From Asterias rubens (Eukaryota), in contig NC_047066.1 of the NCBI RefSeq assembly GCF_902459465.1, forward strand, positions 5,084,001 through 5,148,000: DNA of 64,000 bases. Direction: 5' to 3'. This document shows, in pieces, positions 1 through 38,060 of the stretch. The stretch's first letter is position 1, and each line of letters starts with the position of its first letter. The translations under genes were made by a program, and so were the position numbers. The notes beneath the pieces are model-generated. The model was not told where the DNA came from. It made no database searches and saw only the letters and a program-made list of their open reading frames with translations.

Positions 1-871
1 CGCTATGTGCGCGCGCTCCAAGTAAAGTTTAAAGTTTGTACATGGCACAATTTCATAAAGCCGGTAAGCATTAAAACTAACTAAGCACAGACAAATTTTG
101 CTCAAAACCGGTTACCCGCATTATTTCATAGTTGCAACTGGTGCCCCAAAGCAGTATTTTCTGTTCAGAGTCTTTTGTGAAATTGGGCCCAGTTCGTATC
201 TTAAATCTGGAGCACTTTCCCAATGTCCCTTCAAAGACACCGTACGATGTAACAAAAAGCGCTGGATAAAGTGACTCTATACTTCCATGGATTAAGTCAA
301 AGTGTGCCTTCGGAAGATAACATTGCTCATCCTGGAAGCGGAAATATCACTGCCGCATGAGGGCGTACCTTGCTAATCACAAACACACCTCGATCTCAAG
401 TAAAATTTGAGAAATTAATGTTCACGGCATTAGTTGACCTGTTTTAGTGTGCTTACAAGTTTCCTTTGGTACAGTGAACGATTTCCCTTGTTTAAGCAAA
501 GTTAAATGCACACTAAACACTCCAGTTACTACTCAATATTGGGTTCCAATCAGTACTCACAAAATAAGCTCAGTCTAGTTGTTGACAAAGTTTGGACGAA
601 ATCGTTCCCTGCAAGTAATTAACCCAGTTTGAAACCATCAGCCAACGCACTAGGTTGTTTGTTTATACCAATTTACTTTCTGTCATATGTACAGCCATAA
701 AACATGTACACCCATGACCCATGCCTATTTGTCAACCTACAACCCAATCTTACACCCATGTTTACACCAGCACCCAACTTTGTCACACTCATTTATTTGC
801 AGTGTGACACTCCCGTTTATTTTTATACTCTATATATTTACACCCTTTTCCCTCTCCTTCCTTGTGCCCAG

Positions 872-1077
872 GGATCTATCTGCACCAGCTCCTCGTCCAT
901 CTGCTCGGCCACACCCTGGGCTTGGGTCACTCTCCGGACCCCAAGTCCGTCATGAACCCGGCCGTGCGACCCTACGACCCCGAGTTTGCCCTCACAAAGA
1001 ATGACATGATGGGCTTGCACTCCCTCTACGGCAGGAAAAAGAGAGACAGCGTCCGCCGACAGCGTCGCCATCATTGA
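872..1077 (+). CDS. Terminal coding exon of an MMP-like (M10A) protein with catalytic Glu->Leu substitution and no hemopexin domain (upstream exons not seen in the window)
   Basis: Polypyrimidine tract plus AG acceptor at 870-871, phase 1, the same position as the catalytic exon-4 acceptor of the two other MMPs. Translates GIYLHQLLVHLLGHTLGLGHSPDPKSVMNPAVRPYDPEFALTKNDMMGLHSLYGRKKRDSVRRQRRHH*: three zinc His, Met-turn SVMNP and the LYG end of the catalytic domain. AATAAA at 1094-1099. Confidence 0.85.
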
Positions 1078-1167
1078 CCTGAGAAGGAGTTTGAATAAAA
1101 ACAACTTTTTCTTTATTTTGTGAGTGAGCTCTCCGAATCACGCAAATGCAACGAAAACATTACCAAC

Positions 1168-1320
1168 TTCTAGTTGGTTGACACTGCTCTAGAATTGCAC
1201 TGGTCGGCCGTGGTTCGAGTCTCACCCGAGTAATATGCCTGTGATATGTTTTCCAACAGAACTCGAGAAAGTGCTGAGCATACAGTGCTAGCACACATGG
1301 GTAAAACAAAATGCATATTC
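1168..1320 (+). mobile_element. tRNA-derived SINE, family 1 (in the 3' flank/UTR of the MMP-like gene)
   Basis: TAGTTGGTTGACACTGCTCTAGAATTGC...GGTTCGAGTCTCACCCGAGTAATATGCCTGTGAT matches the reverse complement of 57240-57430. Confidence 0.65.
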
Positions 1321-3407
1321 ATAACCCCCGATGCAAATTTAACATCTATTACTACCAACTTTGGTATCAATCTCTTGTGTTGCCAGACGAAGACCAGACC
1401 CGAGAAAAACCAATGATTTTTGTAATTAAAAACCCATATCCGCTAAACTTCTTTTATGGAAGGTGTGACTACCTCCACCCCCCCCCCCCCGATCACCAAC
1501 AACCACCCCACACGGTGAACCACAAACCCCCAAACTGACATTGATACTTCACATATGTTCATGACCCTAAATCCTTCTACCTTATGTACATAAATGATTC
1601 TTGTAAATAAAGCAAAGGAACCAGTTGGGTAAGGTCTTTTGTTCTAACCAAGATGTCAAAAGCTGACCGATGTGCCTGCTCAGCAGAATTGTTTTTGTTG
1701 AGAATTAATGCACAGAAACGAAACGGGCATTATTTCGGTACCATCGAATTTTATAATGTGCTTAAACGGCCATACAGTGACGGGCCTTTACACATACAGG
1801 GTACCGAAAGCAGAGTGCTAAACTGGGGGTGGGCCAATTTCAGAGAGCTGCTAAGCACAACAGATGATATTGACCTAACAGCATTTCCAAAAAGGGAACA
1901 TTTTAACAACTTGTTATTTAAACCTTCCATAATACTGATTATGGTCCTAGCATTCCCTTGTTTTTATGTGGATTAGTGGCCCCAAAATGAAACACCTTGC
2001 GTAATACGGAGAGCTCCGTGTATATAATGCCATGTAAATAAGCTGTAAAGATAAAAACGAAATACTCTGCCTAACTGTTTGAACTTTTAATTTTTTAATC
2101 AACCAAAGATATACTAATCAAACTATTATGATATTTTCTTATGCTCTGTTATATATCTTTTATGTACACTTTCTGTTTGATAAGCTTTTGAAGTTTGTGT
2201 GTATAATAAAATATTGTACAAAGTTTAACTTCTGCAGCAGTCATGGTGTTGTATTATGATTATGTTTGAGGAAGACATTATTTAGTCTGGAGTTTCAATG
2301 ACTTTCGTAACGATATTATGATGTCAATCTGATAACCATGGGTTTAGTATGGTTGTCAAACCAAAGACCAAGGACATTTTGGGTGAAACGCTCACGTTGA
2401 AGCTTGTTTCGTGCTTACTAACATAGCAGAAATAAACTGTTTTTTAAAAAGCCTGAAGCGCATTTCACAGGTTAGCCATGAAATTAGGTAGCCATTTTTG
2501 CGCGTTTACCATGGTTTTGCATCGTTACGTCATTCATTTTCAGAAACCGGAAGGCAAGCATGCCTTTTCGTGTGCTAATGCTGAAAAAGAAACTCGTAAA
2601 GTAAGCACAAAGCAGCTAAGCAGCTCTACGAAATTTTGCCCAGTGTGCAATTTAAACGGAAGCGCAAAATGCCTGATCTCTATAAACAGTGTTCTAGTTT
2701 ATGTGTGTGGATCAACACAGTTCTTCCAAGGAACTACTGTTAATTTTACTTTAAAAGATCCCGCGGGGACTGTAAATATTTATGTAATCTATTTCCCAAA
2801 ATAACTTAATTCTAAGAACAACCACAGGTGCAAAAACTTGTAAGTGTTGACATTTCGAACTTTATACTGCGTTTATTTTTTTTGGGATGCACTTGGCACC
2901 GGATAATGTTTTCCCCCTGCCTAAAAGAGAAGCCATTTTGTTGTCGTTGTTTTGTTTTGTTTTGTATTTCGCAAATTATTCGGGTCCCGCTGCTTTATGC
3001 CCGAAACACCTTTGTTCAGTTTCTGTTTACCGCGGTCTGATATTGGCTTAGTGTTGTTCATAAAAACAAGAGACATTAACCAGCGAGATATTAATAATGT
3101 TCCTTTGCCAGCTAGCTTGGCGTCTAACATCCCATGTTCAACTCCCATGGAAGTTACTGAGTTCCCATCGGGGCAACCCAAGTAATCAAAATAGTTCATG
3201 TTCCCCCAAATCTGGGTTTAGTTTCAGATCGAACGGGTCTCTTTACATCCTTTACTCTGCTTATGACCCGTCATTCCATGAGGCCAAGGCCTCCGGTAAC
3301 CGAATGTTTTACGATTCTATATTTTATTTCTGAGATGTCCGCGGTTGTTTTTGACAGTGTCGTAAAAACCCCAAGGAGTTTCGAAGTAAGGAGGGAAGTA
3401 GAGCAAG

Positions 3408-12187: not shown

Positions 12188-15100
12188 CTATTTAATAAGC
12201 TGATGACATACAGCCGTTGACATCATCAGCATGGCGGGCAAAAGCGCCCAGGTGCGACCGTGCGCAACGGAGGTTTGGCCGCTGCCGGTGTTCTCCGGTG
12301 TCCCGGCGACGATGTTACCACACCCGAAGAACTGCCGATCGAATCTCGGCAGCTGTCCGTTCGGTGGGATGGCGAGCTTGCTAGACTCCCATAGATACTG
12401 CTGGTAGGTGTTTCCAGTTACAAAATAAACTGATCCTGTGTGAATGGAAACGATGAGAAATTATCATGGGTTAGTTTATATACCAAGTTGTGGAGAGACT
12501 AACAACTATAACCAACGGTATAACAAGCCATACGCCGAAGTCTCATAATTTTGCGGAGCACGGCAAATTACGGAGTCGGAGGCCTTCACGGGAGAGGACT
12601 CGTGGGGGCCGGCGGAGCTCCGTGCCCCACGAGCCTCCAGACCACAGCCTGACGGAAAATAATTGTGACTTCTTTAGCATGCATATCCGTCACTCAGTGT
12701 CGCTAAAGGCGTTAACTTTTAATACAATATTTTCCTGCAAGGTATGTGGGACTACGTTTGAATTATGAAATCAACTCCTTTACTGTATGGTTTACAAGTG
12801 CTGTGGCGCGATATGCTGCCAATCATTACAGAAATAGAACATATAAATAGAAGAGAAGGGAAACAAAATGTGTACAAACCACTTGAATAGAAGGCTGCTG
12901 TGAATCCCGATTTGAGAGACCGCGACCATCTCGTCAGGGGTTGAGGATACCCTTGATCAATGCGGTTATCCTCGTCGTTTAACCTCCAGTACTGCCTCCC
13001 GTTGAACAAGAAGACGTGGTTATTGTTGGGTGGTACGATCACCGCGGCCTGGATACTTCGTGGGGCTCCAGCGCGCTGTCGACGGCGGAATAAATCTCGG
13101 ATGACACCCTTCTGGACGAGTTCACCCGATGGACTGAAATCGTGGTAATTCCTTCCTGAAGGCAGTAATTGGTGATAAGAAACAATTATTTGCATATGAT
13201 ATTTCAATGACAACACGGTAAAGTACGGTAAATGAGACAATGAACAGCCGCATAATGTCACCCTCGAAAAATGTATCTACCACACTCTCTTTGTAAAGGA
13301 TTGAAAACCACTCGTTTTGTCCGCCGTACCACTCGTGCAAAGAGCAATATGGATAAAAGTTACTTTCAACTCGATTTAGAGTGAAGTGTGATCCGATTTT
13401 CACTTTAAAGAAGAATGAAACAGATCGACTTTCGCATGAAAGGAGCGAGGTGACGACTCGGACAAGAGAGTGAAATTTTCACTCTTCAACATTAAGAGAG
13501 AATGATATACGACCAAGTTTCTTCGAGTTGCAAATATTGAATGTTTTCTTGTAAGCAAACACTAAACAGGATAACAGTCACAGATGGTACTAGTCTTTTT
13601 TGTTGGCAACATTGTTCACGCACACACCTAAAGCAAACAGTGCACTCTTATTTACAGTCCACCTCAAAAAGGGAAATATAGTTTGACTCGTTTACTGTCA
13701 CCTTACCTGAGAACAGCCTATAGGATCCGTCGTGACGTTGGTATGACGCGTCCACGGTGGCCAGTTGTGTCTGGAAGCGAGTGGTAATCGGCTTCGGGAA
13801 GCCTGGTCCGGCTACGGAGAAAGTTCGTTGAGCCTCATTGGTAATCAGATCCCAGTACTGATTCCCCTGGTATATGGAAAAGTTGAAGAAAAAAAAAGGT
13901 TTACCATGGAGGAAGATGAAAATGAAACTTTGGCGATCAAAGCCCACACGTTCTTTGCAGACAATATTGGTAGATTTATTTGGTATTTGTAAACAATTGT
14001 ATTTCTATCTGAGTATCTACTAATCGCCGCTTTCTCGCGTGATCCATGCTTCTACAATTATAGTCTTTAGCCTTCGAGAAAGACTCTGCTTGGGTCGTAA
14101 AGTCAGACCAAAACAATTGTTTTGCTTCTAAAATTTGTCTTATTTTAAACTCTGGTGTCTTGGATGGTCTGTCCTTATGAAGCCCCTGTCTGTAAAACTT
14201 GTCTTTTTATCAACGCTTAACTGTGTTTGGATAACTCTAATTTGCTTGTTTTATTCATGCTAAGACTGTAGTGCAGTTACAACGTCACGTGTCTCACACC
14301 CTGCGCCAGGAGTTTAAAGTTGACAGATACGGCGCGTTACAAATGGCCATTATTTAGTTGAAACGGAAATCAGTTTCATTTGTTTTTGCCCAATGCTTGT
14401 TGTATTAAGAAAGAATTTGTATGAAACCATTGGCCAGAATTTAGTGTCTTATCTGAGAACGACAAATTTATTTTCCTCATGGGTTCTCAAAGATAAAACC
14501 ATTATGAGTTGTGTTGCGAAGTACATTATTCTCTGCTTTTAATTTAAAGGAAACCCAAACGTATTTATATAACTTAATATTTGTTCTTGCTGTAACCTCT
14601 CCTTCTTTGTTGTACTATAAGTTTAAATTTTGTTATTGTTGTATTCCTTCCCCATGGTATGGGGTTTGTTATGAACAAAATCGGGTTATAAATAAGTTAT
14701 TCCATACCCTGATCACCATCATTTCAGTCGGTGATGTCATCATTGCCGACCCGATGTGGATGTCACAGGTAGAGGGGGTGTTTGGCCCGGTTGGCGGCCT
14801 CGGGGGCTGGGGTTTGCCTGGGGGTGGCTGGTTTGGGGGATTGCCCGGAGCGGGTCTGGGGTTAGGTCCTGTGGGTGAAATGAAAACATAAACATAAATA
14901 TCGGTTTATAACTTTTGTTTATATTATTTATTTTATCTGTTAGAAGAGTATAGTATAAGCTTTCTTCGTACGTTTATGTGTCTCTGAAGGTGTTAGAAGA
15001 ATCCGTCGAAAAAGGTTGTACCTGTCCTGAATTTAATTTTCTTATGGTAGTTTTAAACAAGTTTAAAGGAACACGTTGCCTTGGATCGGACGAGTTGGTC

Positions 15101-18100
15101 TATAAAAAGTGCTTGTAACCGTTTGTTATAAAACGTACATGGTTAGAGAAAGATGTTTTAAAAGTAGAATACAATGATCTACACAAGTATGCCTCAAAAT
15201 TGCGTGGTTTTCCTTTTACCTCGTCGACTAACACGGTCGGCCAATGGCCGACCGTGTTAGTTCGCAAAATAAAAGGAAAACCACGCAATTTCGAGGCAGA
15301 TTTGTGTAGATCATTATATTCTACTTTTGAATTATCTATCTAACCATATGCATTTTATAACAAACGGTTTCAAACGCTTTTCAACGACCAACTCGTCCGA
15401 TCTAAGGCAACGTGTTCCTTTAAGCTATACGTCAAATCCCGTTTATCCAATAAAATAATTGTAGCCAATGAAATCATATGTCCTGTAAGACCAGTGCCTC
15501 TCTTTGCCAAGTGACCAGTTTGTATACAGTCCTCGGCATTTAGCTTACCTACCATAAAGACTCTGTATTCCCCGGACGTCGTCCGAGGCCAGTTTGAAAC
15601 CGTGCCTGTAGCCCTGGTAGAAGGGCGCCATCAACGACGTTTCCACATCGGAGTGGCCGAGTCCCAGGCTGTGTCCCAACTCATGGGCTGCCACCATAAA
15701 GAGATTCGTCCCTATGAATAAGATTTGTAACACATTAAATTAATATATAAAAACAAAGTTGTCCACACTTTCAACACAAAAATTTTAAAAATCGCTTCCA
15801 TTTTATGTATGCTTGATTGATCTTGTGAAGAGCCTTGCTTAATCTAGCTACTTGGAAATGTGTACTTTCACCAACAATATTGAGAACGTACCGTGAGCTC
15901 TATTTGCTGTGAACATCTCCCCTTCATCAAAATGTGCGTCTCCGTCAATGGTCCGGGATCCCGGGAAGAAAGCGTGTGCCAGGACACCACCCCTGCCGTC
16001 AAACTCGTACCCATCCCCGTGCTGGCCGTGGGCGAACCGCAGCATGATATCAGCGGTGTTACCGGCCGGGACCTGGTGGAAAGTCAAAGGGGTGACGTCA
16101 CTCCACGTCTTAAACGCCCTCTGAAGTTCAGATTTGGTTATGCTAGCGGGTAAATCCTCAGTTAAGTTCTCGATGCTATAAACAAAACAGTCATTCAAGA
16201 TTAATCTTTAAAAAAAAGGTAGCGGTAACAGATTCTGTTTGTCATTATGTTTGAGACCGCAAGAGAATGCACATTGTAACCGCACCGACAGAGGGCGCCC
16301 TGTAAAATCAAACCCTCACCTGTACGTCAGACTCGTTCTCCTCCATCTCCTCCCCGAGGTGGAGTATCTCCTTCTGCGCCTGCGCAGTCTCTCGGCTGCC
16401 CCGTTGATGTCCTTGTTCCCGCACCGGGGCTTTCTCATCATGGCGATTGTCTCCTTGTTCAGCTTCCCGGTCACCAGAATGTGCGCCTTGTACTGCATGT
16501 GAGAGATGGCCTTCTCCATGTTGAGCGGGGACGACCTGTGGTCTGGGTTGGCATCGTCGTCATCGTCGAAGTAGCCAAACTTCCGCAAGTACATCTACAG
16601 AGTGGAGAAGATTTTCATGGGTCAAAATAGGAATTAAGCACAACGCAGTTTTTGTTGACGTGATATACAAAAATATGTGAGACGTCACATTCACTTCAAA
16701 TAATGTTGAAGATGTAAGGTCTGCGGTAACACCATGTAATGATAATCTCTACTATTAATGAGTTGAGGTGGTTTTGAAAAGAACCGTAGGTTCAAGCTCG
16801 ATGTTTCGATCAGTATTCTCTGATCGTCTTCTGGGCAAAACGTGGAGATGTTCAACTGAAAACGCTCGATACCATTAAAGGCAGTGGACACTGTTGGTAA
16901 TTACTCAAAATAATTATTGGCATAAAACCTTTCTTGGTAAAGAGTAATTGGGAGAGGTTGATAGAATAAAACATTGTGAGAAACGGCTCCTTCTGGCTTG
17001 ACGTAGTTTTCAAGAAAGAAGTAATTTTCAATGAAATTGATTTCGAGACCTCAAGTTTAGAATTTGAGGTCTCGAAATCAACCATATAAAATCACACAAC
17101 TTCGTGCGACAAGGGTGTTTGATTACTTCATTCATATCTCGCAACTTCGACGACCATTTGAGCTCAAATTTTCACAGGTTTGTTCTTTTATGCATAAGTT
17201 TAGATACACCAAGTGAGAAGACTGGTCTTTGACAATTACCAATAGTGTCCACTGTCTTTAAGCACTATAACGGTGCATTTATAAGTAAATCAAAACACTT
17301 TAAAGCTGCCGGTGCGACACACAAACTGTGATTGTGTAATATTGGCGAATAAATGAAGACTGCTGCACAACAAGTTCAACAAACTCTAAAAAGGGAGGGG
17401 TGCGTTACAAAACTCACAATATTGAGCCTCTCTGTTAGGGCACAAGTGATTTTTTAAAATTTCAATTAACTTGTATGTTCCCATCTGTTGTGCTTAATAA
17501 TGACAGGTTTTCATATTAATGCTGGCTTTTGTATTTTAAACCAGAATTCGTTTAAAAGAGCTAATTGTTTGCCTTCAATGGGTTGCACCATTGATCGAGT
17601 AAAAAGCTCTGCTGTGCAAGGTTGGCAAAATAAACGTGCATGGATAGTGTAAATACAACTCGTTACAAACACTGCATTCAACTTTGTTGTGCTGTTTTGA
17701 AATTTATGGACATATGCTGTGTTTACGTGGATGAAATTAATTAAAAAAGGCGTCACTGTCCTTGTTGATGTTATAATTGACGTTTTGTTTTGTGTGTCAA
17801 ATCTGCACGTGCCAGTGACGCGACTGTGTGCCTCTACGGTTGCCAGGCAGTGAACCACACGGGAGCTAGCCTTGTGCAAGCACCTAGCTTTGTTGAACAA
17901 GGTTGAAAACCATGCTTCGACCCCACGGTATACTGTGCTATACTGTACACAGTACCATGCAGTTCGTCGTCCAACGTGTGATTCATGCTACCTGGTGAAT
18001 TCAAAGCTGGATTCTTGCTTTTAGAGCCTTGGGACAAGACTACCCAGGAGGATAAGATTCATCATTGATGATGCCCGGACGTTCGTATTACGTAGACGGT

Positions 18101-22242: not shown

Positions 22243-23133
22243 TACTAAGCCCGGGAAGGGACAGTGGTAAGAAAAAAATATGCAGGGGCTAATTCGTTCG
22301 CACGGTTAAGTAATCCGTTCGAACGAATTAATAATCCGTTCGAACGAATTAATAATCCGTTCGCACGGTTTAGTAATCCGTTCGCACGGTTTAGTAATCC
22401 GTTCGAACGAATTAATAATCCGTTCGCACGGTTTAGTAATCCGTTCGCACGGTTTAGTAATCCGTTCGAACGAATTAGTAATCCGTTCGAACGAATTAGC
22501 AATCCGTTCGAACGAATTAGTAATCCGTTCGCACGGTTTAACTAAGGCATGAAATGGCGCTGCACGCATGCGTAAGCAATCCCCTCACAACAACACTTTG
22601 CTTCAAGATGTCCACCCTCGTCTTTTCAATTAGCAATGCATCTATTGACAAACTTATCAACACGGTCATCATCAGAGTCAGAACTTGTGTTGCGGCCCTC
22701 TGCCATCTTGAAGCAAAAAGTTGTTGTGAGGGGATTGCTTACGCATGCGTGCAGCGCCATTTCATGCCTTAGTTAAACCACTGAACGGATTACTAATTCG
22801 TTCGAACGGATTGCTAATTCGTTCGAACGGATTACTAAATCGTTCGAACGGATTATTAAACCGTGCGAACGGATTACTAATTCGTTCAAACGGATTGCTA
22901 ATTCGTTCGAACGGATAACTAAACCGTGCGAACAGATTATTAATTCGTTTGAACGGATTACTAATTCGTTCGAACGGATTACTAAACCGTGCGAACGGAT
23001 TATTAATTCGTTCGAACGGATTACTAAACCGTGCGAACGGATTATTAATTCGTTCGAACGGATTACTAAACCGTGCGAACGAATTAGCCACTGCATATTT
23101 TTTTCTTTCCACTGTCCCTTCCCGGGCTCCGTA
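22243..23133. mobile_element. Non-autonomous foldback DNA transposon with TAC...GTA termini and 6-bp TSD (IS3EU-like), containing inverted 21-bp minisatellite arms
   Basis: GTATCT duplicated at 22237-22242 and 23134-23139. About 50-bp imperfect TIRs (TACTAAGCCCGGGAAGGGACAGTGG / CCACTGTCCCTTCCCGGGCTCCGTA). 21-bp arrays at ~22291-22541 and ~22780-23085 are inverted relative to each other, with an inner inverted repeat at ~22542-22610 / ~22703-22780. The element interrupts the GGTGTATCTCAAC motif of a Kolobok-like MITE. Confidence 0.8.

Positions 23134-25988: not shown

Positions 25989-38060
<12,072 letters not shown>

What the first reader, a model, noticed from the sequence alone, without database searches (positions are those of the whole stretch)
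872..1077. Catalytically dead, hemopexin-less MMP (HLLGHTLGLGH) facing two active GPI-type MMPs
Seen: the zincin motif reads H-L-L-G-H-T-L-G-L-G-H. The general-base Glu is Leu (CTG, two changes from GAG) and the preceding AA is LV, yet all three zinc His, the Met-turn and the LYG end are kept, and the frame is open to a stop followed by AATAAA. Established: Glu substitution in HExxH essentially abolishes metzincin proteolysis. Inference: a pseudo-protease under selection (decoy for TIMPs or substrate, or a zinc-binding matrix protein) rather than a decayed pseudogene, co-located tail-to-tail with active paralogues it might modulate.
Basis: partly seen in the sequence, partly recalled or inferred. 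Interest (0 to 1): 0.72.

Follow-up and report, generated by a model that had tools for sequence, protein, structure and literature searches.

The report
Conserved glutamate-less starfish matrix metalloproteinase
This is the last exon of a small secreted starfish matrix-metalloproteinase gene whose catalytic glutamate is a leucine; the gene is intact, spliced, transcribed and under purifying selection in several sea stars, so it is a real pseudo-protease and not a dead gene or an assembly error.

Summary
Window 872-1077 is the fourth and last coding exon of a 290-aa gene, annotated "matrilysin-like" (Asterias rubens, XP_033628488.1). Its zinc motif reads HLLGHTLGLGH.

The three upstream exons lie 1.1-9.3 kb before the window. 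They encode a signal peptide, a prodomain with a PRCGCGDP cysteine switch, and the first half of the catalytic domain. All are open, with GT/AG introns.

Intron-less contigs from public runs show the mRNA in A. rubens and A. amurensis, with the CTG codon unchanged.

Orthologues carry Leu in A. amurensis (CTG), an unnamed forcipulatid (TTG) and Acanthaster planci (CTT). Patiria miniata has Glu (GAG), as does the nearest outgroup, which carries a hemopexin domain.

Pairwise dN/dS is 0.15-0.29, and 0.13-0.18 for the catalytic domain within the Leu-bearing clade. All zinc ligands, the Met-turn and the cysteine switch are kept. The other 20 MMP catalytic exons in this genome read HE.

The AlphaFold model (pLDDT 89) matches proMMP zymogens.

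Verdict: a selectively maintained pseudo-MMP, or at most a crippled one. I found no naturally Glu-less MMP described. The TIMP-decoy, substrate-trap and matrix-binder roles remain untested inference.

The parts
872..1077 (+). Fourth and last coding exon of the matrilysin-like gene (residues 223-290 of P0152, plus the stop). It holds the second half of the catalytic domain and a polybasic C-terminal tail.
   Evidence: The exact exon model reproduces the annotated protein P0152.
898..930 (+). Zinc-binding motif HLLGHTLGLGH, with all three His ligands present.
901..903 (+). CTG = Leu233, at the position of the general-base Glu of HExxH.
   Evidence: Glu occupies this column in 100% of 84 other MMPs.
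952..954 (+). Met-turn methionine (SVMNP).
   Evidence: M250 is conserved in 99% of MMPs and in all five orthologues.
1033..1074 (+). Polybasic C-terminal tail RKKRDSVRRQRRHH. A basic tail is present in all orthologues.
   Evidence: Its function (glycosaminoglycan binding or convertase processing) is inferred only.
1078..1660 (+). 3' UTR, with AATAAA at 1094-1099 and 1606-1611. Its distal end is approximate.
   Evidence: X1 record 2 reaches L013 5769 (window 1169). X3 record 16 runs about 363 nt beyond window 1300.
1169..1298 (.). About 126-bp interspersed repeat inside the 3' UTR, present in at least 60 copies across the genome.
   Evidence: No Rfam match.
12191..16600 (-). Neighbour N1, a tail-to-tail active-type MMP. 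It has a PRCGNKD switch, an RRRRRR furin site, HELGH, hemopexin repeats and a C-terminal hydrophobic tail.
26642..32951 (-). Neighbour N2, a second active-type MMP. It has PRCGMPD, an RNKR furin site, HELGH and hemopexin. An N run lies in the intron between its catalytic exons.

Best explanation
The exon ends a four-exon, roughly 10.4-kb gene at G000:C5:5074708-5085077. It encodes a 290-aa secreted protein with the architecture of a hemopexin-less (matrilysin-type) MMP zymogen: signal peptide, prodomain with cysteine switch, catalytic domain and a short polybasic tail. The catalytic general base Glu is Leu. The three catalytic-zinc His, the four structural-zinc ligands, the Met-turn and the switch Cys are all kept. 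I infer that the protein still folds as an MMP and still holds zinc, but cannot polarise the catalytic water efficiently. It would therefore act mainly by binding rather than cutting: it could occupy ligands of the MMP cleft (TIMP-type inhibitors or substrates) or sit on sulfated matrix through the basic tail. Shown here: the gene is intact, spliced, transcribed, Leu-bearing in four species and under purifying selection. Inferred: loss of activity (about 0.85), retention of zinc, and a binding-based role. The specific TIMP-sink version is about 0.25.
For: - Gene model: the exon boundaries reproduce annotated P0152 exactly, in the same four-exon layout as three other species.
- Transcription: X1 record 2 and X2 record 8 join exon 3 directly to exon 4. 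X3 record 16 joins exons 2-3-4, and its 8 amino-acid differences are exactly those of the A. amurensis protein P0157.
- Leu codons: CTG, CTG, TTG and CTT in four species, so Leu has outlasted synonymous turnover.
- Selection: dN/dS is 0.15-0.29 overall. For the catalytic domain alone it is 0.13-0.18 within the Leu clade. Crude branch values are 0.15-0.18 for the forcipulatid branch, 0.27-0.29 for the Acanthaster branch and 0.29-0.32 for the Patiria (Glu) branch.
- Active-site residues: H232, H236, H242, M250, H180, D182, H195, H209 and C95 are conserved.
- Fold: the AF2 model has pLDDT 89.4 and pTM 0.88. The best Foldseek matches are the proMMP-10, proMMP-3 and proMMP-1 zymogens (TM-score on target 0.91-0.92 for the first two).
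- Precedent: the top sequence match in the PDB is a proMMP-7 form that reads HALGH at the zinc motif. A proMMP-2 E404Q mutant is also solved. Glu-substituted MMPs therefore fold as normal zymogens.
- Uniqueness in the genome: the 20 other genomic MMP catalytic exons all read HE.
Against: - No biochemical data exist for this protein.
- From my own recollection (Cha and Auld 1997, not checked here), matrilysin Glu mutants keep low residual activity. 'Dead' may therefore mean 'very slow'.
- Patiria miniata keeps Glu in an otherwise equally odd protein, so the selected function may still be proteolytic in some lineages.
- The orthogroup also lacks a calcium-site Asp (D187W) and the Tyr of the PxY wall of S1' (Y254 to V, A or M). 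This could alter cleft binding, TIMP binding included.
- Tissue and timing of expression are unknown.
Confidence: 0.72

Rival explanations
1. It is still a working protease. It would use zinc-bound water without a carboxylate base, or another nearby residue as the base, perhaps with a narrow substrate range.
For: The zinc ligands, Met-turn and cysteine switch are strictly conserved. A latency device makes most sense for an enzyme. The Patiria orthologue keeps Glu. Residual activity of Glu mutants of matrilysin is my own recollection, not checked here.
Against: Glu is invariant in 84 of 84 other MMPs aligned and in 121 of 126 motif instances scanned; four of the five exceptions belong to this orthogroup. 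Leu has no acid-base chemistry. No compensating acidic residue stands out in the alignment. I had no access to the model's coordinates, so the geometry could not be checked.
Confidence: 0.15
2. The MMP fold is only a carrier. The selected product would be something else, such as the polybasic C-terminal peptide released at RKKR, or the prodomain.
For: A basic tail with R-x-K/R-R-like sites is present in all orthologues.
Against: The catalytic domain is the most constrained part (omega 0.13-0.19), against 0.19-0.55 for the signal peptide plus prodomain. The tail sequence itself varies in length and order between genera.
Confidence: 0.08
3. It is a decaying duplicate, that is, a young pseudogene that still has an open frame.
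For: It sits in a tandem MMP cluster where duplicates arise. It carries several substitutions at otherwise conserved MMP positions.
Against: The frame is open and the splice sites intact in four genomes from two orders. dN/dS is 0.15-0.29 at dS up to above 1. Transcripts are spliced.
Confidence: 0.03
4. It is an assembly or sequencing error at the Glu codon.
For: None found.
Against: Independent contigs from two A. rubens runs show no difference at the codon. Three other assemblies encode Leu with different codons.
Confidence: 0.01

Closest known systems
Human matrilysin (MMP-7) zymogen, e.g. PDB 2MZE and 5UE2
   Same: It has the same signal-pro-catalytic architecture without hemopexin. It is the best sequence match in the PDB, aligned over residues 37-280 at E 8e-39. 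It shares the cysteine switch, both zinc sites and the Met-turn. The fold matches proMMP zymogens.
   Different: Natural MMP-7 has HELGH and is an active protease. The starfish protein has HLLGH, lacks a calcium-site Asp (D187W) and the PxY Tyr, has a CGC-type switch (PRCGCGDP) and carries a polybasic tail. The resemblance is structural. In the tree the starfish group does not sit with vertebrate MMPs, so it is not a vertebrate MMP-7 orthologue.
ADAM7 (HQLGH) and ADAM29 (HHLGH), natural pseudo-metzincins of family M12
   Same: They are metzincins that keep the three His and the Met-turn but have lost the general-base Glu. They are regarded as non-catalytic binding proteins (PMC11266112, Table 2).
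   Different: They belong to a different family (M12B adamalysins), are membrane-anchored and multidomain, and have a different biology. The same review lists no M10 (MMP) pseudopeptidase.
Patiria miniata orthologue XP_038056456.1 (P0151)
   Same: It is 65% identical, with the same four-exon structure, PRCGCRDPEF switch, HGDRRAFW, LLVH helix, NDMAGLH and basic tail.
   Different: It reads HELGH (codon GAG), so it may be catalytically competent.
P0160, a 501-aa protein from transcriptome run ERR6349665 (organism not known to me)
   Same: It is sister to the asteroid group with 100/99 support. Its best matches in the A. rubens genome are exons 2 and 3 of this gene. It shares PRCGCRDP, KWNKT and IHLD.
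   Different: It keeps Glu (HEIGH, codon GAG) and a hemopexin domain. It is about 35% identical.
Echinoderm 'matrilysin' class in the review PMC8467561
   Same: [quoted passage not shown] This gene fits that description.
   Different: The review says echinoderm catalytic domains carry HEXXHXXGXXH. Where the term search hit that review, it does not report loss of Glu.

Membership tests
Matrix metalloproteinase (MEROPS M10A / Pfam Peptidase_M10) | Significant match to the Peptidase_M10 profile | tested here: met
   Exon 4 scores 47.1 bits against a cut-off of 24. Exon 3 scores 70 bits in the genome scan. PF00413 is on record for P0152.
Matrix metalloproteinase (MEROPS M10A / Pfam Peptidase_M10) | Three His zinc ligands in HxxxHxxGxxH | tested here: met
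   H232, H236, G239 and H242 are invariant across the 90 aligned sequences.
Matrix metalloproteinase (MEROPS M10A / Pfam Peptidase_M10) | General-base Glu after the first His (HExxH) | tested here: not met
   Leu233, codon CTG. Glu is present in 100% of 84 other MMPs. The protein is a homologue of the family but fails the catalytic criterion for a peptidase.
Matrix metalloproteinase (MEROPS M10A / Pfam Peptidase_M10) | Met-turn | tested here: met
   M250 and P252 are conserved.
Matrix metalloproteinase (MEROPS M10A / Pfam Peptidase_M10) | Cysteine-switch prodomain (PRCGxPD) | tested here: met
   PRCGCGDP, with P93, R94, C95, G96 and D99 conserved. It is a variant: the usual Pro is replaced by Gly or Arg and there is a second Cys. 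The PG_binding_1 profile did not reach threshold on exon 2.
Matrix metalloproteinase (MEROPS M10A / Pfam Peptidase_M10) | Structural zinc ligands (His, Asp, His, His) and calcium-site residues | tested here: inconclusive
   The zinc ligands H180, D182, H195 and H209 are kept, as are D211 and E214. The Asp of the FDG calcium site is Trp187, and the following Gly is His, Arg or Gln. Assignment of the residues to metal sites rests on my own knowledge of MMP-3 numbering.
Matrix metalloproteinase (MEROPS M10A / Pfam Peptidase_M10) | MMP zymogen fold | tested here: met
   AF2 pLDDT 89.4. Foldseek top hits are proMMP-10 and proMMP-3 (E about 1e-22, TM-score on target 0.91-0.92) and proMMP-1 (E about 4e-21).
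Matrix metalloproteinase (MEROPS M10A / Pfam Peptidase_M10) | Proteolytic activity inhibited by chelators and TIMPs | not testable with these tools
   Needs recombinant protein.
Matrilysin-type (minimal-domain) MMP | No hemopexin domain after the catalytic domain | tested here: met
   The stop comes 14 residues after LYG. No + strand Hemopexin hit follows the gene. Transcript contigs run from the stop into the 3' UTR. All four full-length orthologues end the same way.
Pseudoenzyme (pseudo-protease) | Homologue of active enzymes that lacks a key catalytic residue, yet is expressed and evolutionarily constrained | tested here: met
   Loss of Glu; transcripts; omega 0.13-0.29.
Pseudoenzyme (pseudo-protease) | Demonstrated absence of catalysis | not testable with these tools
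   Inferred only.

The most novel reading that the evidence does not exclude
An asteroid-specific MMP lineage first shed its hemopexin domain. It then replaced the catalytic Glu by the same residue, Leu, each time through two nucleotide changes. This happened either independently in Forcipulatida and in Acanthaster, or once with a reversion to Glu in Patiria. In either case the zinc site stayed under strong constraint. The Leu form would be a naturally occurring MMP-family pseudoenzyme acting as a zinc-dependent trap for TIMP/tensilin-type inhibitors or for matrix ligands. That would add a non-catalytic layer to the control of echinoderm connective-tissue remodelling.
Probability: 0.15. Interest if true: 0.8.

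Novelty: new variant of a known kind. Interest (0 to 1): 0.6.

Why it matters
Pseudo-proteases are well documented among ADAMs and carboxypeptidases. The 2024 review of pseudo-metallopeptidases (PMC11266112) lists none in the MMP family, and the echinoderm MMP review (PMC8467561) assumes HEXXH throughout.

This gene is a natural equivalent of the E-to-A and E-to-Q mutants that MMP biochemists build by hand, maintained by selection for a long time. It also has a Glu-bearing orthologue in Patiria, a laboratory model species, which serves as a built-in control.

The pair makes a clean system for asking what an MMP fold does without catalysis. Echinoderms have expanded MMP and TIMP repertoires and mutable connective tissue, so a non-catalytic MMP could matter for how that tissue is regulated.

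The Leu/Glu pattern across sea stars is also a small but sharp evolutionary puzzle: convergence or reversal at a catalytic residue.

Tried and rejected
- **Fragment search:** a search for short orthologous fragments with the 67-aa exon peptide found nothing. This says little, because of the word and length filters.
- **Collection scans:** scans of metagenome contigs and genome contigs with the orthologue alignment returned only the contig already known (JACSEG010005260.1) and nothing new. No further asteroid taxa could be added.
- **Gene tree:** the protein tree leaves Patiria, Acanthaster and the forcipulatids as an unresolved three-way split (support 53/34). AU tests reject none of the three arrangements (p 0.45 and 0.26). 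One versus two Glu-to-Leu events cannot be decided from this gene. Hidden paralogy is not excluded, although dS distances (Patiria-Acanthaster 0.70 against 1.2-1.35 to Asterias) and taxonomy fit the species tree.
- **Synteny:** the 10-kb flanks of the orthologous loci do not reach a neighbouring MMP. Synteny is undetermined.
- **3' UTR repeat:** Rfam gave no match on the 3' UTR or its repeat.
- **Literature:** searches for the four protein accessions found no paper.
- **TIMP complex:** Complex prediction was not run. The TIMP genes of this genome (tandem cluster on C2:2.71-2.88 Mb) are multi-exon, so no unaltered reference sequence of an N-terminal TIMP domain was available.
- **Model geometry:** I had no access to the AF2 model's coordinates, so I could not look for an alternative base near the zinc site.
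- **Pseudogene and assembly-error readings:** both rejected (see rival explanations).

Full report
**1. What is in the window**

Searches show a polypyrimidine tract and an AG at window 870-871. An open frame follows from 872 to the stop at 1075-1077. It translates, after a split Gly codon, as IYLHQLLVHLLGHTLGLGHSPDPKSVMNP...NDMMGLHSLYGRKKRDSVRRQRRHH.

Pfam Peptidase_M10 matches the peptide at 47.1 bits (cut-off 24) over profile positions 107-159, the C-terminal third of the catalytic domain. The codon after the first zinc His is CTG (901-903).

**2. The rest of the gene**

The window is G000:C5:5084001-5148000 of a 417.6-Mb assembly. A genome-wide Peptidase_M10 scan found the first part of a catalytic domain (profile positions 8-102, 70 bits) at C5:5082571-5082861 on the same strand.

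Reading the upstream DNA and fitting exon borders to the annotated protein gives four coding exons:

| Exon | Position | Content |
|---|---|---|
| 1 | C5:5074708-5074821 | Start codon and signal peptide |
| 2 | C5:5080613-5080881 | Prodomain, PRCGCGDPEF switch, start of the mature domain (KWNKTELTY) |
| 3 | C5:5082579-5082862 | First half of the catalytic domain (HGDRRAFW...VAHGF...GDIHLD) |
| 4 | window 872-1077 | Second half of the catalytic domain and the basic tail |

All introns are GT/AG. The spliced frame equals P0152, the 290-aa protein annotated "matrilysin-like [Asterias rubens]", XP_033628488.1, on a contig of 22,602,731 bases, the length of C5.

No hemopexin exon follows on the + strand.

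**3. Transcription and the codon**

Contigs of public runs were laid on C5:5079401-5085300. They include pieces that skip the introns exactly:
- X1 record 2 joins exon 3 to exon 4, with 0 and 1 differences.
- X2 record 8 shows the same joint.
- X3 record 16 (1680 nt) joins exons 2-3-4 and continues into the 3' UTR.

The only difference listed in exon 4 for X1 and X2 is a synonymous C>T at window 942. Nothing is listed at 901-903.

The listed differences in X3 comprise 9 synonymous and 8 non-synonymous changes. The 8 amino-acid changes are exactly those of the A. amurensis protein P0157, so X3 is that species.

The runs are recorded only as "RNA?". The evidence for RNA is that the contigs lack introns.

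**4. Orthologues**

An exhaustive HMMER search with exon 3 gave one close representative, from Acanthaster planci (72% identity). The next hits were at 40% or below.

Word-based searches found Patiria miniata (P0151), A. rubens (P0152), A. amurensis (P0157) and an unnamed 288-aa protein (P0153). P0153 is 86% identical to A. rubens and comes from an intron-less contig.

I solved or read the coding sequences of all five. At the general-base position they read:

| Species | Codon | Residue |
|---|---|---|
| A. rubens | CTG | Leu |
| A. amurensis | CTG | Leu |
| Unnamed forcipulatid (P0153) | TTG | Leu |
| Acanthaster planci | CTT | Leu |
| Patiria miniata | GAG | Glu |

P0160 comes from transcriptome run ERR6349665. 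It is sister to the five with 100/99 support, and its best matches in this genome are exons 2 and 3 of this gene. It has HEIGH (codon GAG) and a hemopexin domain.

The likely history is therefore a hemopexin-bearing, Glu-bearing ancestor, then loss of hemopexin in asteroids, then Glu to Leu.

Acanthaster and Patiria are both Valvatida, while Asterias is Forcipulatida. That implies either two independent Glu-to-Leu replacements or one replacement plus a reversal. Each event needs two nucleotide changes. The gene tree cannot discriminate between these.

**5. Selection**

Pairwise NG86 dN/dS is 0.15-0.29 for all ten pairs.

Within the Leu-bearing forcipulatids, the catalytic domain alone gives 0.13 (A. 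rubens against the unnamed species, dS 0.58) and 0.18.

A crude three-taxon split gives omega of about 0.15-0.18 on the forcipulatid branch, 0.27-0.29 on the Acanthaster branch and 0.29-0.32 on the Patiria branch. No relaxation is visible where Glu is lost, although dS is near saturation for the deep pairs.

The block QLLVH-x-LGHTLGL-x-HSP-x-P-x-SVM-x-P is almost invariant across the five.

**6. What is kept and what is odd**

I compared the five orthologues with 84 other MMPs.

Kept:
- the switch residues P93, R94, C95, G96 and D99;
- H180, D182, H195 and H209, the structural zinc ligands by my knowledge of MMP numbering;
- D211 and E214;
- the three catalytic His, and M250 and P252.

Changed in all five, Patiria included:
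- the Asp of FDG becomes Trp187 (a calcium ligand in other MMPs), and the following Gly becomes His, Arg or Gln;
- VAA before the first His becomes LLV;
- the Tyr of the PxY wall becomes Val, Ala or Met;
- DD becomes ND, and IQ becomes LH, before LYG.

Changed in four of the five: Glu233 becomes Leu.

In this genome the other 20 catalytic-exon copies all read HE. Among 126 motif instances in the proteins retrieved, 121 have Glu. The four Leu are this orthogroup, and one Gln is an unrelated Logan protein.

**7. Structure**

AlphaFold2 with a 90-row alignment gives pLDDT 89.4 and pTM 0.88.

The Foldseek top hits are zymogens: proMMP-10 and proMMP-3 (E about 1e-22, TM-score on target 0.91-0.92) and proMMP-1 (E about 4e-21).

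By sequence, the best PDB entry is a proMMP-7 form that reads HALGH at the zinc motif. A proMMP-2 E404Q mutant is also in the list. Glu-less MMPs therefore fold as normal zymogens.

**8. Mechanism**

- **Shown:** an intact, expressed, constrained, secreted-type MMP homologue without the general base.
- **From established metzincin chemistry:** the Glu polarises the zinc-bound water and shuttles the proton. Its replacement lowers kcat by orders of magnitude. My recollection of matrilysin E198 mutants (not checked here) is that residual activity can remain.
- **Inferred:** the protein works by binding. The conserved zinc site and cysteine switch argue that the cleft, and regulated exposure of the cleft, are what selection keeps. 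This fits a trap for cleft ligands such as TIMP-type inhibitors (a tandem TIMP cluster exists at C2:2.71-2.88 Mb) or substrates. The polybasic tail, basic in every orthologue, suggests tethering to sulfated matrix or convertase processing.

I put about 0.85 on strongly impaired catalysis, about 0.7 on a binding-based role and about 0.25 on the TIMP-sink version specifically.

**9. Neighbours**

Two MMP genes lie tail-to-tail downstream on the minus strand:
- N1 (window about 12191-16600) has a furin site, HELGH, hemopexin repeats and a C-terminal hydrophobic tail compatible with a GPI signal.
- N2 (about 26642-32951) has RNKR, HELGH and hemopexin. Its anchor type was not checked.

Further MMP genes follow beyond the window at C5:5.15-5.18 Mb.

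**10. Comparison with the literature**

The echinoderm MMP review (PMC8467561) recognises one matrilysin-type MMP per species and states that the catalytic domains carry HEXXHXXGXXH. The passages returned by the term search in that review do not mention loss of Glu.

The pseudo-metallopeptidase review (PMC11266112) tabulates M1, M12, M13, M14, M24 and M41 examples. These include ADAM7 (HQLGH) and ADAM29 (HHLGH), but nothing from M10.

No paper cites the four accessions.

I therefore rate this a new variant of a known kind: a pseudo-metzincin, here inside the MMP family. The gene itself is already annotated.

Noticed in passing
window 1169-1298: An element of about 126 bp in the 3' UTR recurs in at least 60 places in the genome at 82-87% identity. 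Copies often sit in short tandem or inverted clusters spaced about 260 bp apart, for example C9:508408-509052 and C5:5838557-5839437. It contains a tRNA-like GGTTCGAGTC stretch but has no Rfam match.
   Followed up: partly
window 942: A synonymous C>T (Pro codon CCC to CCT) appears in contigs of three runs (X1, X2, X7). It is probably a common polymorphism in the species.
   Followed up: no
L034 / L037 (JACSEG010005260.1, 2712 nt): This intron-less copy of the orthologue from an unnamed forcipulatid is preceded by about 1.6 kb that is colinear with the A. rubens DNA upstream of exon 1 (70-80% identity). That suggests a very long 5' UTR or a mixed DNA/cDNA assembly. The 3' end of the contig carries direct and inverted partial duplicates of exons 3 and 4, probably an assembly chimera.
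   Followed up: partly
P0156 (Logan contig, 263 aa): An unrelated MMP that groups with vertebrate collagenase-like sequences reads HQVGH and lacks the segment before the zinc helix. It may be another natural Glu-less MMP, or a mis-assembly.
   Followed up: no
window about 30700-31100: A run of N lies inside the intron between the two catalytic exons of neighbour N2.
   Followed up: no
G000:C2:2717022-2881150: A tandem cluster of TIMP-domain exons on the + strand gives at least 11 Pfam TIMP hits. This indicates an expanded TIMP family in this genome.
   Followed up: no
G000:C10:20450997-20451161 and 20464263-20464427: Two near-identical MMP-like exons read HEVGHVLGLTH, but they match only profile positions 86-142 and lack the usual DD..GIQ.LYG ending. 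They look like a divergent tandem pair.
   Followed up: no
window 22248-22541 (-): A minisatellite with a 21-nt period translates as a NGLLIRS/NGLLNRA repeat. It lies between the two neighbouring MMP genes.
   Followed up: no
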